A DNA stretch of 64,000 nucleotides, taken from positions 29,822,001 to 29,886,000 of the forward strand of contig NC_135761.1 of NCBI RefSeq assembly GCF_052425735.1. The letters run 5' to 3'. This document shows positions 13,401 through 61,853 of the stretch, piece by piece. Every line of letters begins with the position of its first letter. Within the stretch, counting starts at the first letter, position 1. The DNA is from Oculina patagonica (lineage: Eukaryota). A program made the translations under genes and the position numbers. Under the pieces are notes generated by a model. It was not told where the DNA came from. It saw nothing but the letters and a program-made list of their open reading frames with translations, and ran no database searches.

Positions 13401-15532
13401 CTGAAAAAAATATCATACCATGAGCCAGGCTGACCATCTTATCAATGAGAGATTTAGTTTGCCTCTCCCAACTATACTCTTCCCTGTAAAACGTACGCAG
13501 CGATTTAGACTCCTGAAGTCGCTTTCTTCTTTCTTTGCCCGAGATGTGCTTGATTGATTTGGCCCATACTTCGGCTTCATCAGAATCAACCACAAATGAA
13601 GAACCAAATGACACTTTACTTAGAGCTTCTCCAAATCCAGAGTTTCCACTAACAAGGATGGGTAGACCAGCTGATAAGGCTTCAAGACCTGTCAAACCAA
13701 ATGCCTCTGTTCTCGAAGGCATTAATGCAAGATCGACTTCGCAAAGCAAGTTTTTTAAACTTTCCCGGCTTTGTAAAAAGCTTCGTACAGTTAGGCGTTG
13801 AGCAGCGATGCCACACTCGAGCAAACGATTTTTTACCTCGTCTTGCTTTCCATTAGGTGCACCGACGAAAACAAGATGGGTGCCATCTAACATAGCAACA
13901 GCTTTGGCTGCAATGTCAAACCCTTTCAGTTCAAAATCTTCTTTATCTCCACGCCCAAAAACAAGGACTTTGAACTTTTTCCTTTCATCATCAACCTGCT
14001 TGACGTCGGAAAACTCAGCAAAAAGTCCAGGAGTAAATTCAAAGACTATTTGATCTTTCTTACACCCGCGAAGATAAGAGCGAAAAGCGTCACTCAATTT
14101 GGGTCCAACTGTTACCACAAAGTCAGCCATTTCACAAAGTTCGACTTCAGTTTCATGTTTTTCCTCATTAACAGAAACTGGATTAGAATATGTCTTATAC
14201 ATTCCAAGTTCCTCAGGGGCTGTATGAACAACCTGAACCCATTTACAATTGTGAGACTCCCTTATTACTTGTGCTTGATGTCCGAGCTTCACACCATGAC
14301 CAACAACTACGTCAATTTGCAAATCATCTGGTGGGAAGCTCAGCCATTCAAGCTCATCGTAGCCAGGTCGCCTTTTTGCCTTGACAAGATCAATCCGGTG
14401 ACTAAGAGCAGCTTTTTGGTCTTCGTCGTTGCATTGTGGGACAAAAATAGTGACATGTACGTCAGGGTCTTTTGCCACGTTTATGGCTAACTCTCTGTTT
14501 ACGGTGGAAAGTCCTCCTTTACTTGATCCCCATTCTGATGCCAGGAAGGTAACTCTTAATTTCCTTGACGATGTGTCAGGACCACTACTCTCTTGATGTT
14601 CTTCTACACTGGTCATAAGAGGACAGCTCGAGGATTCTGATTCCTGAAATAAATCATGCAAACTTGTAACATCCAAACAACGTTACGGTCTCGTTTCCTA
14701 ATGGACGTAAAGAATTCAAATAGCTGTATTACAAAGATAAGATCCTGATCGCATGAGCTCTTATCAGAGTATACCTTCCATGTTTAACTGTACATGCAAT
14801 ATCTGATTAACATGTGTTTAAGGGTTCAAACATCAAACGTCTCATTTACAGTTTTATGCATAAGACAAGCGTTTTAAATGTTACTTTCTCGAGGACCCTC
14901 AGGAGAATTTGACTGAAGAACGCAAGAAAAGACTTGTTCAAAGGCGTACCCGAAAGCACCTTTAGCTTTTTAAATGCTCTCCAGCAATTGACCAAGTGCG
15001 TCCATAGCTCGATAGACGCACAGCAGCTTGAAGTGTAAGCAAGAATCAATTTTAATCGCCAATTTAAACCAAAATTCTCTTGATAAGGCTTCTGTTTCAC
15101 TGTCCGTATGTTGATGCTTCGTGGGGCTAGAAAAATTACACTGATAGTAATGTTGGGAAGAGCTTTTCTGTCGTTCCTTATTTTTAAAACAACATAGGTT
15201 ATTTTTGCCCATTAAGCGAACAAAACATATCTGCTTAGTGGTGATAAAGTTTGCATATGGTACACGTCAATTTATGGAGCTCGGGAGTGTGGTTGCGTAC
15301 TTGCGCTATTAAGGATTCACTGGCTGTGTTATAACGCTTTTTTGATACCTTAGTTAACGTGTTTATTAGGCCTCTTTCAACTTGAAGGTAGCAATAAAAT
15401 ACTTTCTGTAATACCCGAATTAAGTGATCTAGCGAATTCTTTGTGATTGCATGGGTTGACCCACAACATCATGAGTCCAGTGTCCCATAATTTTAAAAGG
15501 TTAACAATAAATACCTTTGTTTGCAAGGACAT
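1450..15532 (-). CDS. Multi-exon NLR-like immune protein, copy 1 (GT4 glycosyltransferase - 2x TRADD-N-like - T/E/Q octapeptide repeats - RI-like LRR; no NACHT); 3' end probably continues left of 1450
   Basis: Phase-compatible GT-AG exons read on the minus strand: 15532-15515 (MSLQTK), 14643-13419 (GT4), 12879-12799, 12375-11941 (TRADD-N-like 1), 11606-11478, 10235-9843 (TRADD-N-like 2), 8764-8048 (octapeptide repeats), 7059-5823 (LRR), 1520-1450. No in-frame stop across about 1435 codons. Every exon has a counterpart of the same phase in the paralog at 32.6-52.8 kb. Confidence 0.8.
1689..4181 (-). mobile_element. Non-autonomous split-direct-repeat element (Ngaro/PAT-like tyrosine-recombinase retrotransposon derivative)
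   Basis: 74-bp repeat at 1689-1762 and 2003-2076; 154-bp repeat at 1851-2004 and 4028-4181. Minus-strand order is A1-interior-B1A2-spacer-B2. No TSD; a GT dinucleotide is shared by both ends and the internal junction. Confidence 0.75.
2668..3160. repeat. Polypyrimidine (T/C) low-complexity tract with internal duplication
   Basis: Almost only T and C; the block ttcttttttcttacttcttctttctc...tcatctcttttc recurs near 2813 and 2903. Confidence 0.85.
4320..4420. mobile_element. Small hairpin MITE with TA(A/G)CCTG...CAGGCTA ends
   Basis: About 47-bp imperfect inverted arms with a short loop; no TSD seen. Confidence 0.6.
5823..7059 (-). CDS. Exon encoding about 13.5 ribonuclease-inhibitor-type 28-aa LRRs (NLRC3-like), copy 1
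   Basis: 84-bp tandem units encoding SLTxLDVSKNxIGxxGARSLSEALKVNT. Acceptor ttgcag borders 7059. AG|gtaaag donor at the apparent stop codon. Confidence 0.92.
7398..7587 (-). mobile_element. tRNA-derived SINE-like repeat (degenerate)
   Basis: Reverse complement of the spacer plus tRNA-like arm seen at 37930-38106. Confidence 0.65.
8048..8764 (-). CDS. Exon encoding Thr/Glu/Gln-rich degenerate 8-aa repeat region, copy 1
   Basis: ORF 7893..8861; acceptor cgttag borders 8764 and donor G|gtaaag borders 8048. Octapeptide register xEETQ(I/T)Qx. Homologous exon at 44777-45430. Confidence 0.8.
9843..10235 (-). CDS. Exon encoding TRADD-N-like domain 2, copy 1
   Basis: ENSLRIAVECHNLESLERLWEDYRSGRLD...ILEEDYLACKEFL, a clear paralog of the 11941-12375 exon. 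Phase 1-1 splice sites. Confidence 0.7.
11941..12375 (-). CDS. Exon encoding TRADD-N-like domain 1, copy 1
   Basis: Motif EGSLRIIVECSTLEILERLWEDYRSGNLN...ILEEDYLACKLFL resembles metazoan TRADD-like N-terminal domains (recognised from the motif, not searched). A 435-bp exon of the same length lies at 48105-48539. Confidence 0.7.
13419..14643 (-). CDS. Exon encoding GT-B fold glycosyltransferase family 4 (Glycos_transf_1, MshA-like) domain, copy 1
   Basis: ORF 13378..14676 contains EWGSSKGGLST, VVHT, FGR...KGFD and the GT4 ExFG...E signature PSRTEAFGLTGLEALSAGLP. Acceptor tttcag borders 14643 and donor G|gtatga borders 13419. Confidence 0.92.
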
Positions 15533-15630
15533 CACTGGAAGCGTGGAATTTGTTTTGATCCTTTGCAGGTCATACAGTTACTAAAATGATAAAAAAAAAT
15601 TAATTACCAATCCATGTTTAACATAATTTC

Positions 15631-18374: not shown

Positions 18375-21300
18375 ATGTCCATAAAACAAGATGGTTTATC
18401 GCAATTGTTGTCATCTTACGGATCCGATGAGTCTGATAACTCAAGCAGTGATAAAGAAGACTCTGATGAAAAAGAAAAGAAAACAATTATATCCGTAAGG
18501 AAAGGAAATTCGCACGAAGCTTGCGATGGTTGTCATGGTTGTGACCCGGCCGCGGGCTGTGAGGACTGCAGTGAGCAAGATAGCAAGACTGAAAGGTAAG
18601 CTTATGAAGTTTATAAAGGTCTTCTAAATGCAATACTCAGACACATTTTGAAACTGTAGTTGGTCAGTATAAACTGCAGGCCTCAACTGCATACTCCGTA
18701 TTAATTGTGATTTCATTTCATATCCCCCCCCCCCCCCATTGATGAACCGTAAGTTGTGCCGACATAATCCCCCCTAATTTTCAAAAACCCCTTCAGAAAA
18801 AAGGCAACTTTTCCCTAACTCCTTCAGAAATATTCGAAAGATCAAAGAATTCCGACAGGGCGACCCCCTCAGAAATGACTATCAAAATCTCGTCTATGGG
18901 GGGAGGGGGAGGGGGTGGATATAAAATAGAATGGCCCTTAGTGCTGAGTTTGGACCACTTTGGACTGGGTGACTTTGGTTGAAGGATTGCAGAGGAAGAG
19001 GATTGTTCTTTACAACTTGCAAGTCTGCAAGACATGCCAGCCATAATTTCTGGTTGGCCTGAAGAACACATTGGTTAGCCTAAATAGCAATCTGGTAACC
19101 TGCGATCAGGCTTTCTTTTTTTTCGCGGCGGAGGGAAGCAGAAAAAAAGGAAAGCCTGATACAATTACTTGTCAAGTCGTCTGCCGCCCACTAATTAAAG
19201 TATCTGTCAACGTTGTCGAGAATGTCGGCAATGCCATCAGATAAGCGTGCATGATTAGCGCCTTCAGATAATATTTTTACTCTCACAAACGTGTTTGAAT
19301 TACCCTTTTTGAACGAGCTGATCGGATGGTTTTTAAAATTTGTTTTCAGCAAAGGCTGATTTGTGTAAGGATCAGACATTTCAAGGTTGTAGTTTTCGTC
19401 ACTGGCACGATCGTCTGGCATCTTTGGTGGTGTGATGTAATAATCTTCGACACCATTGGTGATAGATCACGCTCTTGGCGAATCCCGTCGGAAGCACCGC
19501 CAAAACATCTTTTCTTTCACAAACTATTCATCGAATACACTCCCTTTGTTCGTCTTTAAATGTTTTGTGAACAAAACTGTTGAGAGATTTTCTAAAAACT
19601 AGAAGAACTTGCTCTCTACTTCATTCTGCTCGACACCCGCCATGATAACAATCATCTATGTGCGATATTTTTGGACCGGAAATTAGACTTGAACTCGTTT
19701 AGCCAATCAGGATAGAGTTCTAATGTTGCCTTTTGTTTTCTGACCAATCAGAAAAAAGTCCAGATTCTGGACTTTTTACAGACGACTCGACAAGTAATTG
19801 TATCAGGCGTTCATTTTTCCGTTGACCCCTCCGCCGCGAGAAAAATAACGCCTGATCGCAGGTTAGCAATCTGGAGCCTATAGTAGGCTAAGATAGCTTG
19901 CAGGTAGCCTTTATATTGGGATTTGGGATTTCTGGCTCATATGGCTCATGATTCATATACCGGTAGTAAGATTAATGTTTTACTCTAAAACGTTTGGCAA
20001 AGAAACTGAGAGTGCCAAACCTTTGTTAAATTTATTAGACGTTCTGACTGTAGACAACGTCTATCGTCTCGAAATATTGAAGTTCGCACATTCATGGCAT
20101 AATGGCCTTCTCCCTAGAGTATTTGACCATATATTTAAATATGCTAGAAATATGCATGGATACAACACAAGATATACAGCCAAAAAGAATTTTTATAAGT
20201 ATAGAGTAAACACTAATGTAGGAAAGCATTTCGTCTCTTTCATGGCAATTGATATTTGGAAAGACCTTCCATCTTCTTTGAAAGACTTAAGTGTGTTAGC
20301 ATTTCCCAAGCAAATAAAATGTTACCTCCTGTCAGAACAAAAACTAGGTAAATTGATTTTCCACTAAACTCAGTTTGTAAATTCGTAAGTCCTCTTACTT
20401 ATTGTTTCTTATTAATCACCTTTTTTCTATTCTATTCATAACATTAATTGTACGGAGAGCTAACTTGAAAACCTACCGGTTCATTTAGCTACACAGCTCA
20501 ATACTTAATTAACTACAAATTCCTGTAATATCTTATTTCTATCTAATTAAGAATACGAACACAACTGTAAACTTTAATATGATCGAGCTAAATAAAAAAA
20601 TAATAATTATTATTATTCATGCAAGTCATGCAAGCCACCCTGGTTAGCCTACATGACACATTGGTTAGCAACAACAACAACAGCAATCTTTATTGTACTC
20701 TTCTTGCCTTTTACAATTTACATTTCAAGATATTTTAAAAATAAGAGTTCTGGTTGCCTGGAATAACAATAGTCTGGCTAGTGGAGCCAATCAGCCAATT
20801 CATAAAAGCCTCTATAGTTAGTTTTAAGGTAGCTTACAGTTAACCTTTAAATTGGTATTTGGGATTACTGGCTCACACGACTCACCGGCTTGCATATTGT
20901 CCACACTCATGAAGGAAGCTCAAAGTTTAAAATAAATTACAAGACTATTTAACAGTTAGTTGGCAACTAGCTAGCTAACTAGCTTAATTTATATTTGCTT
21001 AAGCCCTGAGCCAACTATCAAAATCTGATAGAAATTGAGAGGGAGCCATCTTACTGTTTTAGCATAACCCAGAGACTGATCTATTCAGTAAAAAGTTCAG
21101 TGAAAGTGGTTTATGTACAATAATTTTATATGAGCTTCACACATTTTTCTCAATCCTATTAGTTAAAAACACATAGTTGATGTGTAACATGTATTTTTAG
21201 AATTCACTGATAGAGGATTTCACTATTTTAAATGACAGTTTGTGTCTTGTTATTACTGAACAGAGAGATGTTACCACTGCCTAGTAGAGTACTTGACATG

Positions 21301-24300
21301 TTTAAAGAAGGTAAACAATGAAGATTTGTTGCTCATTATTGATTTCTAGGCCTTTGAAGGGATACAATTTGAAGAACAGTGTGTATACCAGTAGGTTTAT
21401 ATTAAAGGTTTCTTTAAAATGCTCAAAAGGGATTCACTCTTGATGTGTTAAGTCTCTGTTCAAAGGTATAAATAAATGTAATTGTCAGAACTCAACACTA
21501 CATGTACCTTAGTGTAATTAAGATAAATTGGATGTTTTTTATATTCATGAAAGTTTAGTGGATCTTGAAACAGTTATGGGAGCATTAAGGTGATGCCTGA
21601 TGTGTTCTCATTGTCACACACTTCACTTTTGTGTTTCTTTAATTCTATAGACTTTCTGAACAAACTTGGTTTTTAGTCATTAAATATCACTACATTTTTA
21701 TCTCCAATAATTTTTTAAGCAGCAAATGCTCTTGAGAGTGGTTTCAGGAATTATGATTATGATAATTAATTAAAAAATAACAACTGAAGGTTTTTTTTGT
21801 AACATTCAAAGAGTTCTTTCTTGTAATTTTGTTCCCTATAGAACATGTTGCCTTTTCATAAAAAAAAACTTAGCTCTGAAAAAATTAGTTCACATGGGCT
21901 GTGCTCGTATAAACCTGCATGCAAGATTTCCCCAGCTCTTCAGTTATGGGCTGACTTCTCAAATTTTGTCCATTGTAGCTTTACGTGCCTTCTGTAAATG
22001 TATGTGTTTGATACTTTTGTTTAGATTCCATACCAGAGGATGAGCCATCTAAACATGATGGACGAGTTAGAACATTTTCACACTTTCCTGGTAACTGGGC
22101 CATGCATGTATTCATTCCATGTGAGTGATATAATTAATTAATAAAATTAATATCTTTTATTAGTTGTAGTATTTACAGTTCAGGGCTGTCACTAATTTTT
22201 CAAGTAGGTGGGGACACGAAAAATGTAGCCGGGGGACAAGATTTTTCTAGTGTTGGCTGTTGATGGGGGGGGGGGGGGGGGGGGGTAGACTTTAGGAAAC
22301 AACAAAATTGTTCCTAATATGAATTGGTTTTTATGCAATTTTTACACCACTGTAACCTACTACTTTCTCTTTCTCTACGAGGAAAATCTGTTTTTTCTTG
22401 GGAAGTTCTTGCCAAAATTGGGGTGCGTCTTATAGCCGAGTATTTTCGCCCAACTAAATCTTATAGTCGTCATTTTATAGGAACTTGCAGTTAAAACTAG
22501 AAAAAAGAAAACTCTTAGTGTTTGTCATTGAACTGTAAATTATTTTACACCTCCAGAACAAGAAACAGAAAGTTTCAACGAAAAGTTTATTATCCGAGTT
22601 GACAAGTTTTGGTACGTAACGACTGCTTACGTATACATGTCAGCATTATGTTGAAACAGACAAAGAAAATCAGGCATACTCATATTAAACAAATCTTCCC
22701 CATCTTGGAAAGTTGATAAATGACTTTAGAAGACAAGGAAACACCAAAAAGGCCTCAGAATCGTTGGAAATCACTCGATAAACAAAGTGCGAACAGGGCG
22801 CGAATCGCGCGAAGCAGTACGAAGCGTGCTTGAGAACTTGGTAACCAAGCTTCAAACTCAGTGGTCACTGGAAACTACACATTTGCCAGGTTACTAAGCA
22901 GCCAAGATCGAAGCAAAAACGATGGAAAAATGTTTACCTCGAGCTAATTTACGCCTTATATTAGCAAGAAATGTTACTTCTTTACCTGAAAATTGTACCA
23001 AGGAGTATGAGCAACATTCAAACATTCAAATTCTGTAAGGAGAACTGTCCTTAAATTGATGACTGCATCTTTTTAACTTCCAAACTCATGGTGCGTCTTA
23101 CAACCGAGTGTTTTCGGAACATTTTCAGTTTGGAAACTTAGGATGACAAAGTTGCCAAGTTTGGGGTGCGTCTTACAACCGAGTGCGCCTTATAACCGAG
23201 AAAATACGGTAATAATAATTTGCACTAATAAACTATTGGTTTGTTTTTTAATTTACGATTTTGTCATTTGATGTATTTTTCACTTTCCAATGTTTTGGTT
23301 TTGTATCAGTCAAAGTAGCCGGGGCTCAAAGTCGTTGTAGCCGGGGAAAATCCCCGGCCCCCGACCCTTAGTGACAGCCCTGCAGTTGTGTATATTTTGG
23401 TTAATTTTGCCCTTTTTACTGAATGGTAATGAAGGTATTAAAATGACTTTGGGGCTTTATTAAATTCACTCACTCACTCCATTCTGATATCAAACCGCAA
23501 TTAATTTATGCGCTAAACGATAAACGTGCTGACAGAAAGGTCCTTTAAACGCATTCAGCACATGTCAATCAGAAATAAATTATTCTTCAACCTCGTTCCC
23601 AGGGTCTCTCTCTTTTAGGGAACTAAATTGAATTTTCACAAAACAAATCGAAAGAGGATCACTTACACTTATCCTCTGGTGATAAAAGAGAATAGAATTC
23701 GCTCAACGAAGGTATACGTAGCGTGGAGGATGACTCGAGAGAAAATGCGGTTACGGGCTGAAATTCGATTCAGAGCAAAAAGCTGTGTGACGTCATTGTC
23801 ACGTGATATTCATTCCGATCTCCCAAAAATTTATATCATATTGCAGTTCAGTCTATGTGTAATCCATGTGATATAGTGGATATGTCATTGACATAAATCC
23901 CTTTAAGTATGAGGGTTTCAAAGTTGATAGGTATCGCTAGAAAAAGAATGGGTCGAGCCACCTTAAAGGAATTGACAGTGGCTGTGAAATTATTTCCGCC
24001 GCCACATAATTTCTCCAGTTTGAATTTGTAAATGAATTCAATTATCTTGCATAAATTGTGACAAAGAATTCATGTCGACTATCTCTACAGTTGCTTAAAT
24101 ACCATTTGATATTAATTATTTCGTTTAAGAGCAAAGAACGGAACAAAATCTGTGAAATGCTACTTACATTAGTGTAAGGCGTTTGCACCCCGAACCCCCA
24201 ACAGGGCGCTGCCCCTGTACCTTGCTAGGGGCCTGTCTAGTCCCCAGACCCCCCCGCATGATGGGGGGCCTCCAGCCCCCAATGCCGTCTTCTATTAAAA

Positions 24301-27256
24301 TATCTCCTGTTACTTTCAATCATTTTGACAACCCTACATACATATACATGCATACTCTGCTAATCAGTAATTGAGTGTATGTTTCTTCTTGACAGTTAAG
24401 GCCAGTGTGCATTTTGAGAGTCTTGTGGTATCAGTAGCTGAATGTGTGTCAGCTGTGACATCACGTGAGGTACACATGATACCATGTGACGAGTTACACG
24501 TGAGTGTATCCAGAACAGTACCCATTAGACATTACTGGATTGAGCCAATTGTACAACAGCTTAGGAATGGACTCAGCACTGTGCACAGGTAAACACTTCA
24601 ACAACAATGTTGTACACTATTTGTCTATAAAAGTAGACGGATGATGTCCAGAAGATGATTCATGGATTCATGGAATGTACTCACTCAGTTAGATACAGTA
24701 CCACATTTCCTTGATTGATGCCCCTCTTAAATAGTCACCCACTTCTAAGGAAAATAATCAAATTATTGCCACTCCTCAATAAGATGTGTGCATTCACAAG
24801 ACTCTAGGCCAAGTACTTTGCAAAAGCAGTTTGAAAATATGACAAATAACTGTGTAGATTCTTTAAGGTACAACAATTTAACATTTGTTTGTTTGTGTGC
24901 AGTGTTAGATGCATCATACTCGCTGTACCATTTTGAAAGTCCCCCTCAAATAAGCAGCCTTCCCAAAGTAGTGATACAATGTAAAATTTCATGTTTGTTA
25001 GCAAGTACCGGATAGCTAAGAACCTCTAAAAGTGGAAACCCCAAAACGTACATGTAACTTGACTTGTTACGGGAAATAATGAACTTACAGATGTTAAAGA
25101 TGTTAGGCTACTGAATTTGTTTAAGATGACCCTTGTTCCAAAGGTAGTATGTTACTCTTCTTTAGTGTCATATTAATTAAATTATTTTCCCAAAATTGTA
25201 ATCCTTTTTATCCCATTTATCTTGAAAACCTTTTTATTTTATTTAGATAATTAAACCCACACTTGGTGGTTACACATTTAGCTACCTGAAGGTAGCAACA
25301 TTTAACAGTAAAAGTAGTACCATTTGAACTTTACAGTAATGCAACCTGCCTTTTTTTACATTTTTAGTTTTGTGTCTGCCTTGCAATGGCCTGAATTGTA
25401 CACAAATGATGAGAAAACAAGGTAATTAATAGTGTTTATACAAACTTTCCTTTCAGCTCAATAAAATATCAATAATTATTCTTCTTGAACTGACTAATAT
25501 CCAATTGCTATCAATGTTATTTCTGATTGTGGTGTTAATCAAGTCATTTCTGTGTTTTTTTTTTTGTCTTTTTTGCAACCTATCACATTCTGTGCTCTTG
25601 AAGGCTGTAAACTTGTCTTACAACATGTGACATGCGATTTTATGTATTTCAGATCATTTGTAGCACTGAAAATCATGTCAGAATACAAGAAGGTAAGAAA
25701 GCAAACTTTAGTCAAACTATACACAATGCATTCAGCTTGTTTGAAGTATTAGCTCTTCCTTGAAGATGCACTGTACAGGCACAGATAATGATATTGGTAT
25801 GGGTGAAAACTAACCATTGTGTGGTTTTGGTTTTCAGTTCAAAGATGTTGTTGATTTAGTTAATGAAGTCTTTCAGGAATTTTCTCTCCCTGCATTCTAC
25901 AAGGTACGTACATTATACTGATCAAATCTAATTTTACTTTTTTTACAGTAACAAACTTGTATCTATGTTATGTTTTTGATGTAGTTAAAAATACTCTTCA
26001 TACATGTAGTTTTTAGTGTATAAAAATTTAATCAACATTTTGTGAGTATGTCAGTGCTTTTTGGAATGTTTAAATTAAAGGAGAGTTGGGGCAGATTGAG
26101 ATTAGAATACATGTACCCTTAAACTTAGAATACTATTAACTCTATGTGCTGTTGTATGAGGGTGGCCTACTTGTTTTTTGTCCCCTTTTTCTCCTTAACT
26201 CTTGTGCCAACCTTAATGTACAACTTGCCATAGGTAGAATTGGTTTTAATTTCAAATGTGACTTCATTTATGTTTGTACATTTTTACACTGTAGGATCCA
26301 TCATTCCATGTGAGTGTTGCATGGTTACTTGGTGACATCTGTTCTAAGAGTACACAGGACATACAAACTAAACTTCAGGTAATATATGTACCCAAGCTGA
26401 TCACAGGGTCCCCACTCACTGACTCATTCCATGGATGTTCAAATCTTAGAAAACCAATAGTAACTTTTTTAAAAGTTAACAAATTTTTGACTCTTAAAAG
26501 AGTCAACAATTTTATTACCAAGTTCTCAGGTTAAAGCCAAAAAGAGTCAACAATTTTATTACCAAGTTCTCAGGTTAAAGCCAAAAAGAGTCAACAATTT
26601 TATTACCAAGTTCTCAGGTTAAAGCCAAAAAGCCTGCATCTTGTCAAGAACAATCTGCATGTTTGAAGTCATTTCTTGAAATTGCAAACATCTTCTGAAA
26701 TCAGGAGGGCTTAGTAATGGGGTGGCATAAGAACCATGAGTTACATGTACTTAAAACAAAAATATACAATGTACAGGGCATTCAAAGGATGAACATATTG
26801 TAAAACAGGCTACTACAAGCGGTATTGTACAGAGTTTATTGTTATCAATGTATTGGGTGTTATTGTGAAATAAATAAAAAATTAAACAAACAAACAAACA
26901 AACAAATATAGACAGGGCTATGATTTTAAATTACAAAATACCCATATGATAAACATTGATGATTTATAAACAATTTATCGTCTTGCATTGCAGTTGTTTA
27001 TCATTTTAACTAATAAACATGATTAGAATATTGAAACCGTTTATTCCAAAAAAATGCGACTGTTTCTATGTCAGCATGTCCAAACCGTGTCTATGTTAAC
27101 ACGTTGAGTGAACAACTTGGGACCAGAAGAGCATTTTCCTGGAACCAGTAAAATTTGCCGAGCACCCACTTTTTATTGCGGTTTTCACTGAAATGCGAAC
27201 TCTGACATTCAATCCTGAACCAACGGTTTACGCCTTTTGCTGCCATCAATCAACTT

Positions 27257-49231: not shown

Positions 49232-50725
49232 ACTACAATATCCATAGTTTACCTATCTGCAGTGGCAAGTCATGAAGGTCTGTATCCGCGCTGTATTCTC
49301 TGCCACAAAATTGTCGGAAAAGTCCAAACTTTGAGATTTCCGAAGGTGTCCCGACCAAAACACGATCAGTTTGCAAAGGAGAGATGTAATTATGGTAATT
49401 ATATTCCACGCTTTTATGGTGAGAACAATGCGTTTTTATGAAGGACACGATTGTTTATGCCCAATATTATTATGACTACTCTGAGTTGCAGAAACAAAAA
49501 TAAATTGAATAAAAATTAGCTCATAGACTTCCTACAATTCATATAAACGTATAACGCCAAGTGCTGTTTTAAATTGGTTAAAATATCAAAGAAACAGGAA
49601 TTTTTTTTTTAAAAAAAAATCACGCGCACGCACCCATATTTTTATCCAGTCATGAATATCTCGTACAGTTGTCGATGTCAGTCGTTGCACTTCGTGCATA
49701 CGCTTTAAATAAATGCATAATGATGAGCCTAAGGTGTCCCCCGCGACCTTAATGTTCAGTAGTTTTTCTTGGGAATTACATTTAGCAGAATTACAATTAG
49801 TAGTTTTTCTTGGAAATTATTTTTTTTGTTACTTCCATTGCCTGGAGTCAATATACCAGTCGACAAATCAGACATATAAACAACTGTGTGCTCGAAGGTA
49901 CGGTACCTGGTGGGTGCTTAGACTTGACTGCCGTTTGTGGAATCTGTACTGTTCTTCCTGTTGAGCTCAAGCAAGATACAGAAGCATCTACCAAAAAAAA
50001 AAAAACATTACAGTGTACTTGTCATTCTAGTTTGCAAACTATCTTTTTAAGCTGATTTTGCACATGTACTATTACACTGTTAGCTCTAAAACAAACTAGG
50101 AGGAATTTCCTAAAAGCTTTAGGATTCCTACTTTTTTTAATCAATGCTTAGCATGAAATGTTACCAGCAAACGCTGTGTTTAAGTGTTCGCTGTGACATT
50201 CCGGTAATAGCCAGCAAGGTTTTTGCTCTAAATTTGCAGTATTCTAGGTCGTTTTAATTGAGCTAGATTATTAAGGAAATAACCTCAACTTGAATCGATC
50301 ACTTTTATGATTTAAAATGTTATTCTTTTTGTCTGATTATATATTGGCAATAACCTATTATTAAATTTAAATATAATGTTTTCCTTTTGTTTGCAGTAAT
50401 TCAACATATTTCACATATAGGGATATTGTTCGTATCTTTGTCTCAACATCACTGAGATTATCGAAGTCCCTCCTCAATTTCACATGGATAAAAGCGCAGG
50501 TTCAGTGTTACATTCCCAACTTAAAGCAGATCAGGCTAAATGTTGAGGTCAGATTTTTCATCATGCCACCAGGCTGGCAAAATTCGGCAACTGCGTAACA
50601 AAGAAAGTCATATAATAAACTTCTAATCCCGGCTTCTTATCAACACTTTTTAGCTACTTACTAGTAAATAATTCATTTTCAGTCGGTCTATTAGTGAACA
50701 AAGTTGATACTAAAAAGACACCTAC

Positions 50726-51906
50726 CATGAGTCATGTTGACCATCTTGCTGATGAGAGATTTACTTTGCTTTTCCCAGCTGTACTCCTCTTGGTATGACA
50801 TACGCAATAGTTTAGACTCCTTAAGTCGCTTCACCCTGTCTTTGCCTGAAATATTCTTTATTGATTTGGCCCATTCATTTGCATTATCTGAATCAACCAC
50901 AAATGAAGAACCAAATGGCACTTTACTTAGAGCTTCTCCAAATCCAGAGTTTCCACTAACAAGGATGGGTAGACCAGCTGATAAGGCTTCAAGACCCGTC
51001 AAACCAAATGCCTCCGTTCTCGACGGCATTACTGCAAGATCGACTTCGCAAAGCAACTTTTTTAAACTTTCCCGGCCGCTTTGTAAAAAGCTTCGTACAG
51101 TTAGACATTGAGCAGAGATGCCACACTCGAGCAAACGATTTTTTACCTCGTCTTGCTTTCCATCTGGTGCACCGACGAAAACAAGATGGGTGTCATCTAA
51201 CGTAGCAACAGCTTTGGCTGCAATGTCAAACCCTTTCAATTCAAAATCTTCTTCGTCTCCACGCCCAAAAACAAGGACTTTGAATTTTTTCCTTTCATCA
51301 TCAACCTGCTTGACGTCAGAAAACGCAGCAAAAATTCCAGGAGTAAATTCAAAGACCATTTGATCTTTCTTACACCCGCGAAGATAGGAGCGAAAAGTTT
51401 CACTCAATTTGGGTCCAACTGTTACAACAAAATCAGCCATTTCACAAAGTTCGACCTCAGTTTCATGTTTTTTCAGGGGCTGTATGAACAACCTGAACCC
51501 ATTTACAATTGTGAGACTCCCTTATTACTTGTGCTTGATGCCCGAGCTTCACACCATGACCAACAACTACGTCAATTTGCAAATCATCTGGTGGGAAGCT
51601 CAGCCATTCAAGCTCATCGTAGCCAGGTCGCCTTTTTGCCTTGACAAGATCAATCCGGTGACTAAGAGCAGCTTTTTGGTCTTCGTCGTTGCATTGTGGG
51701 ACAAAAATAGTGACATGTACATCAGGGTCTTTTGCCACGTTTATGGCCAACTCTCTATTTACGGTGGAAAGTCCTCCTTTACTTGATCCCCATTCTGATG
51801 CCAAGAAAGTAACTCTTAATTTTCTTGATGATGATGTGTCAGGACCACTACTCTCTTGATGTTCTTCTACACTGGTCGTAAAAGAACAGCTCGAGGATTC
51901 CGATTC
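50726..51906 (-). pseudogene. GT4 glycosyltransferase exon, copy 2, broken by a 50-bp deletion
   Basis: Split ORFs 51463..51804 and 50691..51491. Copy 1 bases 14163-14212 are missing, giving HTAPEKT-stop. Confidence 0.85.
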
Positions 51907-53072
51907 CTATAAATAAATTATGCAAACTTGTAACACCCAACAACGTTACGGTTTCGTTTGCTAACGGACGTAAACAATTCAAATAACTGTATTACAACTG
52001 AAAAGATCCTGATTGCATAAGCTCTTATCAGAGTATACCTTGCATATGTAACTGTACATGCAATATCTGATTAACATGTGTTCAAGGGTAGAAACACCAA
52101 ACGTCTCATTTACAGTTTTACTACAAAAGACTAGCCTTTTAAATAACTACTTTCTCGAGGACTCTCAGGAGAATTTGACTAAAGAGCGCAAGAAAAGCGT
52201 TAAACTTGCTGATCGTTGCTCAAAGGCGTACCCGAAAGCACCTCTAGCTTTTTTTAAAAAAAATGCTCTCCAGCAATTGACCAAGTACGTCCATAGCTCG
52301 ACAGACGCACAGCTTGAAGTGCAAGCAAGAATCAATTTTATTCGCCAATTTAAACCAAAATTCTCTTGATATGGCTTCGTTTTCACTGTCCGTATGTTGA
52401 TGCTTCGTGGGGCTAGAAAATTTACACTGATAGTAATGTTGGGAAGAGCTTCACTGTCGTTCCTTATTTTTAAAATAACATTGGTTCTTTTTTCTCATTA
52501 GGCGAACAAAATAAATCTGCTTAGTGGTGATAAAGTTTGCATATGGTACACGTCAATTTATGGAGCTCGGGCGTGTGGTTGCGCACTTGCGCTATTAAGG
52601 ATTTACTGGCTGTGTTATAACACTTTTTTGATTCCTTAGTAAACGTCATTATTACACGCCTCTTTCAACTTGAAGGTAGCAATAAAACACTTTCTGTAAT
52701 ACCCGAACTAAGTGACCTAGCGAATTCTTTGTGATTGCATGGGTTGACCCACAGCATCATGAGTCCAATGTTCCATAATTTTAAAAGGTTAACAATACAT
52801 ACCTTTGTTTGCGAGGACATCACTGGAAGCGTGGAATTTGATTTGATCCTTTGCAGGTCATACAGTTACTAAAATGAAAAAATAAAAAATAAAAATAAAA
52901 TAAAAAATATTAAAATACATTTGACAGATAATGCCAATTTGGCCATTGTTACTGTTTTATGAACAAAATTATGATGTTAATATGGTTGAAAAATATATCA
53001 GTTGTTATTTATTAAACTTGATTTTCTATCTAAAATATATTTAAATACAAGAAAGAAAGGAAATATTTTATA

Positions 53073-53541
53073 TTATTATATGGCAACAATAGTACGCGCG
53101 CTCTGATTGGCTGCTGAGCGGGCATTATTTTCTTGTAATGACCGGGCATTATGAAAAACTTTGTCGGCTCGGCGGTTTTTTGAGTTGTGAGTAAAAGCTA
53201 CTAGCGCAATTGCGAGAACGACAATAAATACCGACAAAATGTAACTATCTTTTCAACAACTGAAAGAAAAATATTAGCATACCGATACTTCTTTAGTATG
53301 AGCGACGGAGAGAGCAACAGAAAGCGAGAGCGAGTTTAACCTCGGTGTTTTCTAGATATTTTAGTTTAGAATAGCGCTAAAAGGCCATATAATAAATAAC
53401 TTATTAACCTCGTCCGTTCGGTCATTACAGGGGAATCTCAGACCTCGGCCTTGATGTATTGACCTCGCTGTCGCTCGGTCAATACATCAAGGCCTCGGTC
53501 TGAGATTCCCCTGTAATGACCTCACACTCGGTTAATAAGTA
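53073..53541. mobile_element. Interspersed repeat ending in a long hairpin (related copy at about 1170-1425)
   Basis: Shares atagtacgcgcg..tgattgg and atataataaata..ttattaacctcgt with 1179-1377; hairpin at 53399-53540. Confidence 0.6.
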
Positions 53542-55111
53542 GTATGTATAATTTTTGATAATTTTAAATATCAGGAAAAATGTGTGGTAGTCTTGATCGA
53601 ACAGAAAGCAAGATATCACCATTTCTAATATGTTTCGTTGTATGAAAAATATCAAACAGCTCCTGTTTTAATAAAGTGTAACGTGTTACAATATTCTTCC
53701 TTTAACTTTTTTTTCTTTTACGTTGCCCTTTAATGCTTTGCATGTCACTTCCGTTGCACGAATTTTTTTTAGGCATAACCGCTTGCAGGAATTTTTTTAG
53801 ACAAGTTTCCCTTGCAGGAATTTTTTTTGGTAAAAGTCACCCCCCTACAGTTATATCTAATGATCCGTCCCTAAAGCTGTGGAGCATGTTTAGGAAAAAA
53901 AACAGTCCTTGAAAACATTGATTCTTAATACCTTTCTTTCAAGGACATCTGACACTGGACATTTTGGTCCGATAAGACTCCCTCGCGTGTCGAACAGTCA
54001 CTAAAATGATAAACACAATTAATTTCAAGCTATATGTGAGGAGTTTTGAGTAACCTGAAATTGCCTTCTACTCAGATTCTACCTGTTTAATACCATGCTG
54101 AATGAAGTTTTATTTAACATGCATTTTAAATTGTGCAAATCGTAGGCTTTGCTCGGTAATTCATGAATTCAATCAGTTGTCCATTTTGTACTGAAATGAT
54201 GCGAGTTTTAATTGTTATTTGAGCTATCATCGTTTTTCACCGCACATGTGAGCCCCTCTATGGGTATTTCCAAAGAAATCGAAATCGGGACGATAACTGC
54301 GGAAAAACGAAGATTTCTATTGAAGCGAAGATTTCAGCTTCGGGCTCGTGGGGTCGTATAAAAGTAAACTTATAAAGAAAATAAAGGACATCAAAAACTG
54401 AACAAACAGAACAACGTCGGCAAAACTTTCCTTGTTAATATACTGTTTCAGCAACTATCTGCTTTTCATTAATTTAAACAGTCATTTAAGCAATTTGTTG
54501 CTGAAGTGAGACATTTATTCGGCTGTGAATTACACTGACTACAATGCCACGCAGTTTCAATCCATAAAACAAAAACTCTGCTTTTAAATATAAGTCTGCG
54601 TGTACCAAGATAGGAAGGCTCACATGTAGCTTTTGATGGGCGCCAGAAAATGTACCTAACTGACTGTGAGTAAAGAAATTGAGTCTGCAGGAAATTTGTG
54701 CATGAAATATATTCCTTGATATAATTATTGGAAAGCGCGGTTATTCTACTAGCGAGACTAGATGGATGTCAACACGAACAAAGCAACGATTAGCTACTCA
54801 CATTATTCAAGAGAAATGTCGCCGATAATTCCAAAAGAAACATCGCTTCCGTTATTCCCGAAAACCAGGGCCATTATTCCATTATATTTCACCTCGAAAT
54901 TTTTTGTTATTCTTGTTTCATTTAATGGGATTCTTCTTCTTCAGTCCCCGTAGCTACGATAATAGAAACTTCTAAAACCTTACCTACACCATCTTTTAGA
55001 TTATTAACTTTCATGAACCTTAATGAATAATAAATCCAGTTGGTAAGTCGCCCTTAGCCAACCAATCCGAATCGAAAAACAGTAAGGTTTGTTACTAACC
55101 AACCTTACGTA

Positions 55112-55703
55112 CAGTCAACTCTCGTTATAGCGGACACGCTCGGGACTTCGTTTAGTGTCCGTAATAGCGAGAGTCCGTAATAGCGGGGTGTGAGGAAAAA
55201 ATGGCGTTAACATAGGTTAAATAGTAATAAGCTATGACAAGCTTATCAACAGTCGTGAAAAGACTCAGTAGTCGTTAGGTATGGAGAATGGCAATGGTCG
55301 AGGGTTTGAGGGTTTGATCTCTCAAAAGGAGTCGTCTGAAAGAAAAGGGCGCAAGCTGAAGTGAAAAAGCAAAGTCTGGTGTACAGCTACTGAAGCAATT
55401 GATGCGAAAATAATTATTGCAGAAGACTTCTGAAGTATGTTTCGACAAATAGTATTTAACACACTGCAATTTTCTGCAATAATGTTATGTGAGAAGTTCA
55501 TGGTGTCCGCTTTATCGAGAGTCAAAACAATAAAATTGTTCTTTTGGTACCACGAAAGTGTCCGTAATTCCGTAATAGCGAGAGTCCGTAATAGCGGGAG
55601 TCATTTCTAGTCAAACCTCTATAACTTTCGCCGGGGATCTGAATTTTGTCCGTAATATCGAGCGTCCATAATAGCGGGGTGTCCGCAAGGCGCGAGTTGA
55701 CTG
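55112..55703. mobile_element. Tc1/mariner (pogo/Tigger-like) MITE, TA TSD
   Basis: TA|cagtcaactc ... gagttgactg|TA; internal tccgtaatagcg repeats; absent from the paralogous region near 17200. Confidence 0.85.
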
Positions 55704-57030
55704 TACATGTATTTGTATTTCCTGAATAAATAATACATAGTTTTAACTGCGACAGACGAGAAAAAGAACCTCACAAAATGAGGAATATCGACAGGCCAAC
55801 TAAAGGTTCTGTAAGCCTGTGCAGAAAATCGTCGACACTAGTCGAAGGAACTTCTTAATGGTCCTTAATATGCAATATAATGCCGAATATCAAGAGTTGT
55901 ATCTTGTATACAGCTGAACCCAGTAAAGAGCTTGCAGTTTACCCGGAACCCCTAGCACCTCTTTTGCCGCCGACGTTCGTACAGGAATCGAGAAGTATCT
56001 TGTCTAAATACCCGGTGCATTAACTTTCAAGGATACAAAATCAATAGTCAAACCTGTATTTTGACGAGCAGACTTGTAGACCTTGGATCGAACCTTCTTC
56101 GATAAGATCAGACTGTCAGCGATTCACAAGTGAAAGAGGAACTTAATTTGCATACTCATCAGTATGCTGCTTGAAAGACGTCAACACGAAAGGGGAAGAT
56201 AAATAAGGAGACGCATGAATGCGTACATCAGACTTTGAAGTAGAACTGTAGATCTTTTTTTTGTACAATAAACACTGACGAAATAATATGCTACTGGTCT
56301 ACGATCTTCGCTCGTCTGGTTGGCTTGCGCACTCTCTCAGTGTTTATCATAGCTTCTCATGCATCAATGGCGCGAGCATGAGTAAAATAGGAAAAGCAAA
56401 CCTTTGATATGTCCATAGTTAGATATGTCGGATAATCTTCTCTCATAAGGCCTGTCCAGAGTAAAAGGAAACGTCTTCAGGTTAAATAAAGTAAATCCCT
56501 TGGCGAAGAAACGGGCTGTGGCCCCAACAACGATTGAACAACAAAGCCTGCGTGAGGAATGTGATACTATCTAGAGGGATTTTGAGTTTGACCTTTCACT
56601 TTCAATTTCCTGTTATTCTAATTCTATACGTGTAGCTGACGAAAATTTGTATCAAAACACAGTGAAGCTAAAGAGACTGGAATGTACGCGCTATGTGAAT
56701 AAAAAGGCAATGGAAAATGATTTACTGCCCCAGAAACTTCCATTATATTCGATTCTTTTTCTGAGGCATTCCAAGGATTCCATAGGCAAAGACGGCGAGA
56801 GACTGGTAAAGAAAATAACTTAGTTGAAGGAGCAGCTACTGCTCTGGTAACTAGAATGGGTCCAATTTCAAAATGGCGGACAAATGACGGTAATTTGAGA
56901 TTTGAGGAGAAAAGATGTCCATAAAACAAGATGGTTTATCGCAATTGTTGTCATCTTACGCATCCGATGAGTCTGATAACTCAAGCAGTGATAAAGAAGA
57001 CTTGGTTGAAAAAGAAAAGAAAACAATTAA

Positions 57031-60000: not shown

Positions 60001-61466
60001 ATATTGAATGTATTGATTATTCATGAATTTTTGACTGCCGGGTATCTAGTCTTTTGAACAACCGTGCCCGTGAGTCGAGGATTTTATAGCCGAAGCCAAG
60101 AGAATTCGTCCACAACAAAAGCAAAACATTATTTAGAATCGCTTCGCATTTCTCAGCAAATATCGAATACTCTCGCAGGGTTTCAACTTCAGTTTTTGTA
60201 GAAATTATTCTATAAGAGTTGACACCGGAGTCAGAGTACGAATTTTTTCTAAGTGTCGAAGAATCAAGATTTTGTAGTATGCCCAAGCTCGAAAATTTTC
60301 TCAAACACAAAGCCAAAACTATAATTGAAATCGCTTGGCATTTCTAAGCAAAGATCTATAGTTTTGAGGAGGATTGGATTGGTTTTTCCGTGGAAATTCT
60401 AGAATAATTTCAGACTGCCGGGTATGTAGTATTTTGAAAACACTTCCCGGCTGCCGGGTATCTAGACACAATGTAAAAAGTAAACTTCCAAGTTAATTAA
60501 TAATTCCTTACTACATGCATGCGTTCTATTTTTGACTTAAGTAACGTGAGTAAATAAAATATTTATATCATTCCCAATTTCAGGTAAGTGAATGAAATGA
60601 TCTAACTGTTTACTTCTTAAATTTTGAAGTGCCAGAATCTAAACAAACTAATAATCTTTCCTCCGATCTTTGACAAAAAATTTCAGAACATGCACGTGAC
60701 ACAGGTCACGCAATGAGGAACTCAGTCGATAATTTTTACTATTTTCTTCTTTCTGAACCCCTATATAACCTAAGTATAGGCATAAGACGAAAAAAAAATA
60801 AAAGCGAGTTTAAACTTGCTTTATTTTGTGCAAATCATTTCTTCCAAATGGAAATAAAGCGAAGCAGATCTCTTAGCGGGGGACGTCTTTCAAAATAAGA
60901 ATATGCAAATTACGCACGAATACGTCGTGAACTTTCGTTTCTTATCGGTGTGAATCTCGAGTACCCAGATTTTTTATTTGATATTATAATAGTAGAGACA
61001 TAGAGCTTTTGCACAGTGTTTAGTTTGACTCGCTATCGGACATATCAAGGTGCTTTTTCGGCCTCTAAAGTTTCTCAATTTTTGCCGTTTCCCGAAGTGC
61101 TTGATAGAGCAATATTTTAAAAGGCGATGAAAATCTTAAGATAGCTAGAAAAAATTAAAAGTGCCTGTTGCTTGAAAGAAGAAAAATAAAGCTATTATTC
61201 TACGTTTATTTCGATTCAAAGCATTGAAAATTGCTCTTATAGGAATATCGAGAACTTTGCCATTTTTACGTATATTTTTTGCATATTTAATGAGCTAAAA
61301 ACCGTTATTTTCGTTTTTTCTTAATTTCTCGAAAACCATAAATTCCCAGAAGATGAGAATAATATTTTCGAACATAGTTCCCCAAAGGTGTCCTTCGGGC
61401 AAAGTTTCAAGATTTTCGATTTTCCCAGCCTGTCCAACGATTCTCCATATTCTCCGTCGGAGCCTC
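57031..61466. mobile_element. Kolobok-like non-autonomous DNA transposon, 4436 bp, about 364-bp TIRs, TTAA TSD
   Basis: ttaa|gaggctccgacggagaatatgg ... ccatattctccgtcggagcctc|ttaa; TIRs 57031-57394 and 61103-61466. Purine-purine termini with TTAA fit Kolobok rather than piggyBac. No transposase ORF. Confidence 0.88.
58748..60473 (+). mobile_element. 1726-bp non-autonomous element with about 490-bp TIRs and a 9-bp TSD (Mutator/foldback-like), nested in the Kolobok-like element
   Basis: Termini cattgtgtctagatacccggcag. TSD taaaaagta at 58739-58747 and 60474-60482. TIRs 58748-59237 and 59988-60473. Confidence 0.9.
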
Positions 61467-61853
61467 TTAAATCCTTAGGGAAAGGAAATTCGCACGAAGC
61501 TTGCGATAGTTGTGGGGACTGCAGTGAGAAAGATAGCAAGACGGAAAGGTAAGCTTATGAAGTTTATAAAGCTCTTCTAAGTGCAATACTCCGACACATT
61601 TTGAAGCTGTAGTTGGTCAGTATAAACTGTAGGCCTCAACTGCATACTCGGTATTAAGGGCGATTTCATTTCATATCCCCCCCCCTTCCTTAATGAGGTA
61701 AGTCGTCCCCCCCGAATTTTCGAAACCCCTTCAGAAAAAACTTCAGAAAAAAGCCAACTTTTCCCTAACCCCTTCAGAAATGTTCGAAAGATCAAAAAAT
61801 GCCAACAGGGCTACCCCCTCAGAAATGACTATCAAAATGGGGTATAAAATGAA

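What the first reader, a model, noticed from the sequence alone, without database searches (positions are those of the whole stretch)
50726..57030. Copy 2 looks like a chimera from unequal crossover inside the GT4 exon; predicts a third paralog to the right
Seen: from about 50890 rightward (13583 in copy 1), the GT4 exon, the next intron, the promoter and USB1 exon and intron 1 are closely alignable between cassettes. Left of that point the GT4 C-terminus diverges sharply (EAEVWAKSIKH vs NANEWAKSIKN), introns no longer align by eye and the LRR consensus differs. Inference: an ancestral A-USB1-B arrangement recombined between paralogs A and B, giving A - USB1 - (B body + A head) - USB1' - B. 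This explains why a housekeeping gene was duplicated and shows a way to swap enzyme heads onto new sensors.
Basis: partly seen in the sequence, partly recalled or inferred. Interest (0 to 1): 0.7.

Follow-up and report, generated by a model that had tools for sequence, protein, structure and literature searches.

The report
Recombination hinge in coral immune-gene array
The sharp change in similarity inside the glycosyltransferase exon is a real, old recombination junction, but it is one of several in an eight-gene tandem array that keeps re-pairing diverged sensor bodies with a shared enzyme-head, promoter and USB1 module, and copy 1, not copy 2, most likely carries the foreign head.

Summary
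Observation confirmed. Copy 1 and copy 2 differ by 27.7% left of 13582/13583 = 50889/50890 and by 5.5% right of it (max-chi-square p=0.001). Synonymous divergence is about 1.0 left and 0.10 right.

Interpretation partly supported. Right of the junction the copies stay alike for at least 19 kb, through the whole USB1 gene (K about 0.05-0.10). Left of it only exons align. That scale fits crossover or duplication, not a short conversion tract.

The single-event model fails on four counts:
- The window lies in a tandem array of at least 8 GT4-TRADD-N-LRR genes and 5 USB1 copies, which are all the USB1 copies found in the genome.
- Every pair between body lineage A (copy 1, Pm1) and lineage B (copy 2, Pp1, Pp3) shows the same junction, so it predates copy 2.
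- Distances to two other lineages point to lineage A, hence copy 1, as the one that acquired a B-like head.
- Other members have their own breakpoints in the same exon (about 13810-13900, 14420-14450, 14570), and PHI tests show further exchange.

The predicted B-like paralogs exist. Pp1, 70 kb to the right, has the same head and its own USB1. Pp3, 283 kb to the right, has a different 5' flank and no USB1.

Copy 2 itself is decaying: a private 50-bp frameshift deletion sits in its GT4 exon and a transposon sits in USB1' exon 1.

This is ordinary tandem-array dynamics in an unusual gene family.

The parts
13582..13583 (-). Junction J1 in copy 1 (lineage A): old tail to the left, young head to the right
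   Evidence: Alignment; max-chi-square breakpoint 13583 for c1-c2, c1-Pp1, Pm1-c2 and Pm1-Pp1, all p=0.001
50889..50890 (-). Junction J1 in copy 2 (lineage B)
   Evidence: contigs of runs X1 and X3 span it (records 2 and 17)
13419..14643 (-). Copy 1 GT4 exon (exon 2): acceptor CAG| before 14643, donor G|GTATG after 13419; open frame
   Evidence: PF20706 GT4-conflict E=1.3e-89; splice motifs conserved in five paralogs
13419..13582 (-). Copy 1 tail (last 54 codons of the GT4 exon), lineage A type. Identity: 92% to Pm1, 95% to the eighth member, 72% to copy 2
50726..50889 (-). Copy 2 tail, lineage B type. Identity: 100% to Pp3, 99.5% to Pp1
50726..51906 (-). Copy 2 GT4 exon, broken by a private 50-bp deletion
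   Evidence: Two ORFs in different frames; PF20706 hits split 3-119 and 135-385; premature stop at codon 154 in the exon1+exon2 model
51472..51473 (-). Site of the 50-bp deletion (copy 1 bases 14163-14212 are missing); it shifts the frame. The other six paralogs are undeleted
   Evidence: contigs of X3 and X7 carry extra letters here (table 5)
13583..15603 (-). Copy 1 most-homogenised block: GT4 head, intron 1, 5' mini-exon
   Evidence: K about 0.05-0.07 to copy 2 and 100% identity over 14286-14385; mosaic nearest neighbours
50890..52892 (-). Copy 2 counterpart of that block; 98.8-99.2% identical to Pp1
15515..15532 (-). Copy 1 putative 5' coding mini-exon (ATG TCC TTG CAA ACA AAG | GTA), in frame with exon 2; the conserved island runs to about 15603
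   Evidence: Conserved in Pm2, Pm1, c1, c2 and Pp1. Inferred; no direct RNA read
52803..52820 (-). Copy 2 putative 5' coding mini-exon. It rescues the ATG>ACG change at the internal Met
   Evidence: An X11 contig stops at 51905, the predicted acceptor, and its depth accounts for 67 nt in bin 52767-52963
18375..18494 (+). USB1 (copy 1 cassette) first coding exon, [24 protein letters not shown]...; its 3' end is uncertain
   Evidence: Conserved island and open frame. The match to the N-terminus of human USB1 is from memory, not tested
21268..21310 (+). USB1 exon [14 protein letters not shown]
   Evidence: Conserved island with AG/GT borders
22033..24640 (+). USB1 HVSL-domain exons (22033-22170 and 24335-24640), including the first H-x-S motif
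   Evidence: PF09749 hits; exons open and conserved in four copies
56915..57030 (+). USB1' (copy 2 cassette) first coding exon, cut short by a transposon at a TTAA
57027..61470 (.). 4.44-kb non-autonomous element with 383-bp inverted ends and a TTAA target duplication, private to copy 2. Pp1 holds the empty site
   Evidence: This explains why alignability ends at 57030

Best explanation
The window holds two units of a tandem array on contig C4 (about 29.74-30.24 Mb). The array has at least eight GT4-TRADD-N-TRADD-N-repeat-LRR genes, all on the minus strand. Five of them are followed by a copy of USB1 on the plus strand.

Each unit has two parts with different histories. The left part is the sensor body: LRR, repeat linker, two TRADD-N exons and the last 54 codons of the GT4 exon. 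It falls into four old lineages: A (copy 1, Pm1 and an eighth member), B (copy 2, Pp1, Pp3), Pm2 and Pp2. The right part is the GT4 head, intron 1, a 5' mini-exon, the intergenic DNA and USB1. It is young and similar in most units.

The two parts are joined inside the 1.2-kb GT4 exon, at a different place in each lineage. I infer that this long, conserved exon is the preferred site of non-allelic homologous recombination between array members. Repeated unequal crossovers there copied the head-promoter-USB1 module next to different bodies and multiplied USB1 as a passenger. Short gene conversions then kept patching the head.

It arose once, at about the time the USB1 copies multiplied (K or dS about 0.1), and was inherited by all A and B members. 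Lineage A, and so copy 1, most likely received a B-like head, not the reverse. Copy 2 has since begun to decay.
For: Shown:
- Array content. 7 GT4 exons lie on C4 between 29741451 and 30156882. An eighth A-type TRADD-N exon and tail lie at 30242562-30244008. Five USB1 (PF09749) copies were found, all inside the array and none elsewhere.
- A one-sided step. Left of J1, 21% of the sequence is alignable and only in exons (K 0.26), with dS 0.53-1.0 in the tail and TR1 exon. Right of J1, K is 0.05-0.10 over about 19 kb including introns.
- A shared junction. Max-chi-square gives 13583 for all four A x B pairs tested.
- Topology. The tail tree groups (c1,Pm1) at 100/100 and (c2,Pp1,Pp3) at 99/96, with a patristic distance of about 0.38. 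In 13583-14075 the topology is the same but the distance is about 0.06.
- Other breakpoints: Pp2 at 13811-13899, Pm2 at 14418-14449, Pp3 at 14569-14574, c1-Pm1 at 14320, all p<=0.002.
- Further exchange. PHI p=0.0005 even within the head alone. Triplet runs show c1 as Pm1-like up to about 14060 and c2/Pp1-like over 14080-14500. The AU test rejects (c1,c2,Pp1) in the tail (p=6e-6) and marginally rejects (c1,Pm1) in 14076-14616 (p=0.04).
- Polarity. B-Pm2 dS is 0.24-0.37 and B-Pp2 is 0.30-0.39 in TR1 and tail. In head II the same pairs give 0.25-0.28 and 0.28-0.36. A-Pm2 falls from 0.73-0.92 to 0.24-0.29, and A-Pp2 from 0.49-0.81 to 0.29-0.32.
- Star-like, mosaic USB1 copies, with pairwise K 0.058-0.104.

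Inferred: that crossover rather than conversion moved the long module, and that exon homology fixes where exchanges start and stop.
Against: - No outgroup could be fetched to root the trees. The polarity rests on distances from only 54 tail codons and about 150 TR1 codons.
- Only 264 kb of the array was readable, plus 10 kb each for Pp2 and Pp3 and 4 kb for the eighth member. The order of events cannot be reconstructed.
- The native lineage of the young module is unknown.
- Long-tract conversion, or selection against exchange in the bodies, could give a similar picture without many crossovers.
- The eighth member's contig stops at a 500-N run 3 nt from J1. The assembler therefore had trouble at this exact repeat boundary, and its head is unknown.
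- No raw reads were laid on copy 1's junction.
Confidence: 0.68

Rival explanations
1. One unequal crossover between an A gene and a B gene inside the GT4 exon produced copy 2 (B body plus A head) and duplicated USB1, leaving the original B to the right.
For: The step at 50890 is one-sided, and similarity to copy 1 continues through USB1'. B-bodied paralogs lie to the right. Pp3 has a different 5' flank and no USB1.
Against: - Pm1, Pp1 and Pp3 share the junction.
- Distances to Pm2 and Pp2 indicate that A, not B, changed partner at J1.
- The adjacent paralog Pp1 has copy 2's head and its own USB1.
- Copy 2 and Pp3 part company near 51100-51830, not at 50890.
- There are five USB1 copies and four body lineages.
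Confidence: 0.12
2. A short gene-conversion tract of about 2 kb (13583-15603) between otherwise old whole-cassette duplicates. J1 is simply its left end.
For: The block is the most similar part (K about 0.05, against 0.10 further right), with stretches of 100% identity. There are mosaic nearest neighbours and a significant PHI test inside the head. For Pm1 versus lineage B the similar stretch is bounded on both sides (dS 0.07-0.09 in 13583-14075, then 0.31-0.34).
Against: Past the right end of the block, divergence rises only to about 0.10. It stays there for 17 kb, introns included. Left of J1 introns do not align at all. The apparent fall to 79% was caused by gap columns in the BLAST identity. 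Conversion explains the fine patchwork but not the main asymmetry.
Confidence: 0.12
3. No recombination. The tail evolves fast under diversifying selection and the GT4 domain is conserved by purifying selection.
For: dN is higher in the tail (0.20) than in the head (0.02) for c1-c2.
Against: Synonymous divergence steps ten-fold at the same point (1.0 against 0.10). The flanking intron is unalignable on the left, while non-coding DNA on the right is 90-95% identical. Tree topology changes across the exon.
Confidence: 0.02
4. Assembly artefact: contigs mis-joined through the near-identical head repeat, or haplotypes laid out in tandem.
For: The eighth member's sequence stops at a 500-N run 3 nt from J1. 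Copy 2 and Pp1 are 99% identical around the exon.
Against: - There are no N in the 264 kb read.
- The heads differ between copies by 1-13%.
- The junction recurs in five genes, each with private differences.
- Copy 2 and Pp1 diverge to K 0.1-0.14 elsewhere.
- Short-read contigs of two samples cross 50890.
Confidence: 0.04

Closest known systems
Plant NLR (R-gene) clusters shaped by unequal crossing-over and gene conversion, with chimeric paralogs and birth-and-death evolution (for example Rp1, Cf-4/9, RPP8; from general knowledge, not tested here)
   Same: A tandem array of immune-type LRR genes. Members are chimeric, with breakpoints inside coding sequence. Homogenised segments sit beside diversified ones, and some members are pseudogenes.
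   Different: These genes have no NB-ARC or NACHT domain. Their head is a GT4 glycosyltransferase. The homogenised side includes the promoter and a whole neighbouring housekeeping gene (USB1). The host is a stony coral.
GT4-TRADD-N-LRR proteins of cnidarians, cephalochordates and hemichordates (Kaur, Iyer, Burroughs and Aravind 2021, eLife, PMC8195603)
   Same: The same domain order: GT4-conflict, TRADD-like N-terminal domains, LRR. The same kind of lineage-specific expansion, with more than 100 GT4 exons in this genome.
   Different: In the passages I read, the paper catalogues architectures and expansions. It does not describe how array members exchange segments.
Concerted evolution of tandem arrays by non-allelic homologous recombination (opsin, globin and KIR arrays; general knowledge)
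   Same: Recurrent exchange at a conserved segment produces hybrid genes and copy-number change. Passenger sequence is duplicated with the unit.
   Different: Here only one side of the hinge is homogenised. The other side keeps four old lineages.

Membership tests
Chimeric gene from homologous recombination between paralogs | An abrupt, statistically supported change in divergence between two paralogs at one point | tested here: met
   Max-chi-square breakpoint 13583, 27.7% against 5.5% differences, p=0.001
Chimeric gene from homologous recombination between paralogs | The change is also seen at synonymous and non-coding sites, so it is not due to selection | tested here: met
   dS 1.0 against 0.10; left intron unalignable, right non-coding DNA 90-95% identical
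Chimeric gene from homologous recombination between paralogs | Different, well-supported tree topologies on the two sides | tested here: met
   Trees. AU test p=6e-6 against (c1,c2,Pp1) in the tail and p=0.04 against (c1,Pm1) in 14076-14616. The groups were chosen after seeing the data
   The same junction appears in Pm1, c1, c2, Pp1 and Pp3 comparisons
   Pp1's head is 98.8% identical to copy 2's, and Pp1 has its own USB1. Only the distant Pp3 fits, and it has a different switch point
   K is 0.05 in the first 2 kb and 0.07-0.2 beyond, with mosaic patches
Short-tract gene conversion | A similar tract bounded on both sides by old divergence, up to a few kb long | tested here: not met
   For c1-c2 the right side stays at K about 0.10 for 17 kb. 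The feature is met only for sub-tracts, such as Pm1 versus B over 13583-14075
GT4-conflict / TRADD-N / LRR immune-type gene (PMC8195603) | GT4-conflict domain, then TRADD-like N domains, then LRRs, in one gene | tested here: met
   PF20706 E=1.3e-89; PF20694 in two exons; PF13516 E=7e-59. Splicing of the exons is inferred
USB1 (HVSL, 2H phosphoesterase) | HVSL domain with its H-x-S motifs | tested here: inconclusive
   PF09749 positions 19-137 were found in five copies, above the cut-off, and the first H-x-S motif is intact in four copies. The C-terminal half was seen only weakly, in one copy

The most novel reading that the evidence does not exclude
The pairing may not be accidental. The GT4 exon could serve as a selected exchange hinge that lets a coral re-pair one effector head, its promoter and a USB1-type 2H phosphoesterase with many sensor bodies. 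The multiplied USB1 copies would then be working partners of these immune genes, for example by acting on nucleotide signals or RNA ends, rather than passengers.
Probability: 0.08. Interest if true: 0.65.

Novelty: new member of a known kind. Interest (0 to 1): 0.4.

Why it matters
The finding shows in detail how a large, poorly understood family of coral immune-type genes diversifies. Sensor bodies persist as old lineages. The enzyme head, the promoter and a neighbouring housekeeping gene are copied and homogenised across the array through exchanges inside one long exon.

This explains the five USB1 copies without invoking selection on USB1. It also warns annotators that some array members are pseudogenes: copy 2's GT4 exon is frameshifted and USB1' is interrupted by a transposon.

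The mechanism itself is the familiar one of plant resistance-gene clusters and other tandem arrays. The value is a well-resolved example in a cnidarian, not a new principle.

Tried and rejected
- My first reading was a 2-kb gene-conversion tract bounded at 15603/52892, with USB1 only 79% identical. I dropped it when substitution-only counts gave 89-92% (K about 0.10) through the whole USB1 region. The 79% came from gap columns. Alignment breaks at 15603/52892, and multi-copy repeats lie close by on the right in both copies.
Outgroup loci from the C4:13.8 Mb cluster could not be cut out either, so the trees are unrooted.
- Searches with the tail alone (182-184 nt) did not reach the outgroup.
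- The eighth member looked at first like an A-type gene that ends at J1 without a head. In fact its sequence runs into a 500-N stretch there, so nothing follows from it. I did not try to fill that stretch.
- All sequencing runs were available only as contigs. They show that the junction, the undeleted form and the transposon-free forms exist in other samples. They cannot show expression levels or confirm that copy 2's 50-bp deletion is transcribed.
- Paper searches found no description of exchange within coral GT4 arrays.
- The earlier-findings search by words returned nothing relevant.
Full report
WHAT IS THERE

The window is G000:C4:29822001-29886000 of a 529-Mb eukaryotic genome. An earlier scan note calls it the stony coral Oculina patagonica; I did not check this.

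Two paralogous genes lie on the minus strand. Each has:
- a large exon with a GT4-conflict glycosyltransferase domain (PF20706, E=1.3e-89 in copy 1);
- two exons with TRADD-like N domains (PF20694);
- a repeat-rich exon;
- an LRR_6 exon.

This architecture was catalogued for cnidarians in PMC8195603. To the right of each gene, on the plus strand, lies a USB1 gene (PF09749 exons).

Aligning 12900-15900 with 50200-53200 gives about 72-75% identity over 13399-13582 / 50708-50889 and 95-100% from 13583 / 50890. Maximum chi-square puts the breakpoint at 13583, with 27.7% differences left, 5.5% right and p=0.001.

Synonymous divergence is about 1.0 in the 54 tail codons and 0.10 in the head. The intron to the left does not align. 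So this is a change of genealogy, not of constraint.

HOW FAR THE SIMILARITY REACHES

BLAST first suggested that high identity ends at 15603/52892 and falls to 79%. That figure was inflated by gap columns. Counting substitutions only, copy 1 and copy 2 differ by K about 0.05-0.07 in 13583-15603 and by K about 0.10 (range 0.07-0.2) all the way to 32235/76082. That stretch covers the intergenic DNA and the whole USB1 gene, introns included.

Alignment breaks at 15603/52892, and multi-copy repeats lie just to the right in both copies. 52964-53554 and 54934-55721 have contig depths of 10^4-10^5. 16032-16320 is a 287-bp repeat with dozens of copies that matches on both strands.

Left of the junction only 21% of copy 1's 13.6 kb aligns to copy 2. 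That part is all exons, with K 0.26, and dS is 0.26-0.61 in the TRADD-N exons. The main step is therefore one-sided and involves about 19-25 kb. That is too long for ordinary gene conversion and fits crossover or duplication.

THE WIDER ARRAY

The genome has more than 100 GT4 exons. Seven closely related ones lie in tandem on C4:
- Pm2 at 29741451
- Pm1 at 29782630
- copy 1 at 29835381
- copy 2 at 29872697
- Pp1 at 29942868
- Pp2 at 29986949
- Pp3 at 30155683

An eighth A-type TRADD-N exon and tail lie at 30242562-30244008. All five USB1 copies found in the genome lie in this array, after Pm2, copy 1, copy 2, Pp1 and Pp2. Pm1 keeps only remnants of one.

I read 264 kb of the array without a single N. 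I also read 10 kb around Pp2 and around Pp3.

LINEAGES AND JUNCTIONS

In the tail the genes fall into four lineages: A = copy 1 and Pm1 (92%), B = copy 2, Pp1 and Pp3 (99.5-100%), Pm2, and Pp2. Identity between lineages is 70-82%. In the head (13583-14616) all seven are 87-99% alike, and copy 1 is closer to copy 2 (96.3%) than to Pm1 (94.3%).

The breakpoint 13583 is recovered for c1-c2, c1-Pp1, Pm1-c2 and Pm1-Pp1. So the junction predates the multiplication of both lineages and is not a feature of copy 2 alone.

Other lineages switch elsewhere in the same exon, all at p<=0.002:
- Pp2 at 13811-13899
- Pm2 at 14418-14449
- Pp3 at 14569-14574
- copy 1 versus Pm1 at 14320

Further evidence of exchange:
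- The PHI test is significant even within the head alone (p=0.0005).
- Triplet site patterns show copy 1 as Pm1-like up to about 14060 and copy 2/Pp1-like over 14080-14500.
- Segment trees change topology.
- AU tests reject the discordant groupings: p=6e-6 in the tail, and p=0.04 for (c1,Pm1) in the 5' half of the head.

WHO IS THE CHIMERA?

Lineage B keeps the same synonymous distances to Pm2 and Pp2 on both sides of J1. In TR1 and tail they are 0.24-0.37 and 0.30-0.39. In 13583-14075 they are 0.25-0.28 and 0.28-0.36. Lineage A drops from 0.73-0.92 and 0.49-0.81 to 0.24-0.29 and 0.29-0.32.

The simplest reading is that lineage A, and hence copy 1, acquired a B-like head. No outgroup could be fetched, so I hold this at roughly two in three.

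THE PREDICTED THIRD PARALOG

Pp1, the next gene to the right, has a copy-2-like body (K 0.003-0.13). It also has copy 2's head (98.8%) and its own USB1. It is a copy of the whole chimeric unit, not an unrecombined B.

Pp3, 283 kb to the right, is 99-100% identical to copy 2 from at least 47000 to about 51100. Identity then falls to 82% and 75%. Pp3 has a different upstream region (74%) and no USB1. That matches a B body with a different 5' end. But the switch point differs from 50890, and this exchange is far younger than J1.

The USB1 copies are star-like and mosaic, with pairwise K 0.058-0.104.

GENE MODELS AND DECAY

A conserved island at 15380-15620 holds, on the minus strand, ATG TCC TTG CAA ACA AAG followed by a GT donor. 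It is in frame with the GT4 exon's acceptor (c1 14643; c2 51906) in five paralogs.

A contig of run X11 stops at 51905, and its depth accounts for 67 nt near 52803-52869. This supports the mini-exon indirectly. The mini-exon makes the ATG>ACG change shared by copy 2 and Pp1 harmless.

Copy 2 alone lacks 50 bp (copy 1 14163-14212). That shifts the frame and gives a stop at codon 154.

USB1's first coding exon starts at 18375 in copy 1 and 56915 in copy 2. In copy 2 it is cut at a TTAA by a 4.44-kb element with 383-bp inverted ends (57027-61470). That element carries a nested 1.73-kb element, and a second, identical copy of the nested element lies at 61853-63581.

VERDICT

The junction is real and recombinational. 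Unequal crossover is the right kind of mechanism for the long shared segment. But it is one episode in a recurrently exchanging array, the polarity is probably reversed, and short conversions overlie it.

The principle is well known from plant resistance-gene clusters and other tandem arrays (general knowledge). I found no description of it for coral GT4-TRADD-N genes.

Noticed in passing
window 51472-51473 (copy 2 GT4 exon): A private 50-bp deletion shifts the frame of copy 2's glycosyltransferase exon (stop at codon 154 in the two-exon model). The other six paralogs are undeleted. Copy 2 is probably a pseudogene.
   Followed up: yes
window 57027-61470 and 61853-63581: A 4.44-kb non-autonomous element with 383-bp inverted ends and a TTAA target duplication sits inside USB1' exon 1. 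It holds a nested 1.73-kb element with 387-bp inverted ends. A second, 100% identical copy of the nested element lies 380 bp further right. Pp1 has the empty TTAA site.
   Followed up: partly
window 15515-15603 and 52803-52892 (minus strand): A conserved 5' mini-exon with an ATG and six codons is spliced in frame to the GT4 exon. If real, the start codon of these genes is about 0.9 kb upstream of the Met at 14616, and the ATG>ACG change in copy 2 and Pp1 does not matter.
   Followed up: partly
just left of the window, C4:29804425-29821881 (window -17575 to -119): An orphan B-type LRR exon (window -1105 to -119) lies there with about 17 kb of 3' flank that is 92-97% identical to the flank of Pp1. 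No TRADD-N or GT4 exons follow it. It looks like the stump of a paralog lost by deletion between Pm1 and copy 1.
   Followed up: partly
C4:30242562-30244008 (loci L028, L029): This is an eighth array member with an A-type TRADD-N exon (89% aa) and tail (95% nt to copy 1). Its sequence ends in a 500-N stretch that starts 3 nt from the position of junction J1. The 1 kb beyond the N stretch is unrelated to the array.
   Followed up: partly
window 16032-16320: A 287-bp repeat matches on both strands (like a miniature inverted-repeat element). It has dozens of 88-96% identical copies on many contigs.
   Followed up: no
window 52964-53554 and 54934-55721: These very high-copy repeats (summed contig depth 10^4-10^5 in four runs) are inserted between copy 2's 5' end and USB1'. 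Contigs lacking 53073-53545 and 55109-55702 exist in other samples and match the Pp1 form.
   Followed up: partly
window 38007-38082: ARAGORN calls a tRNA-Thr (GGT) here. It lies next to 37775-38106, which matches 7385-7586 in both orientations. It may be a tRNA-derived repeat rather than a tRNA gene.
   Followed up: no
window 18490-18500 versus 61470-61480 and Pp1 (array position 126790): The GT of the candidate donor after USB1 exon 1 (TCC|GTAAGG in copy 1 and Pm2) reads TT in copy 2 and Pp1. Either the true donor lies further downstream, or these two USB1 copies splice differently or not at all.
   Followed up: no
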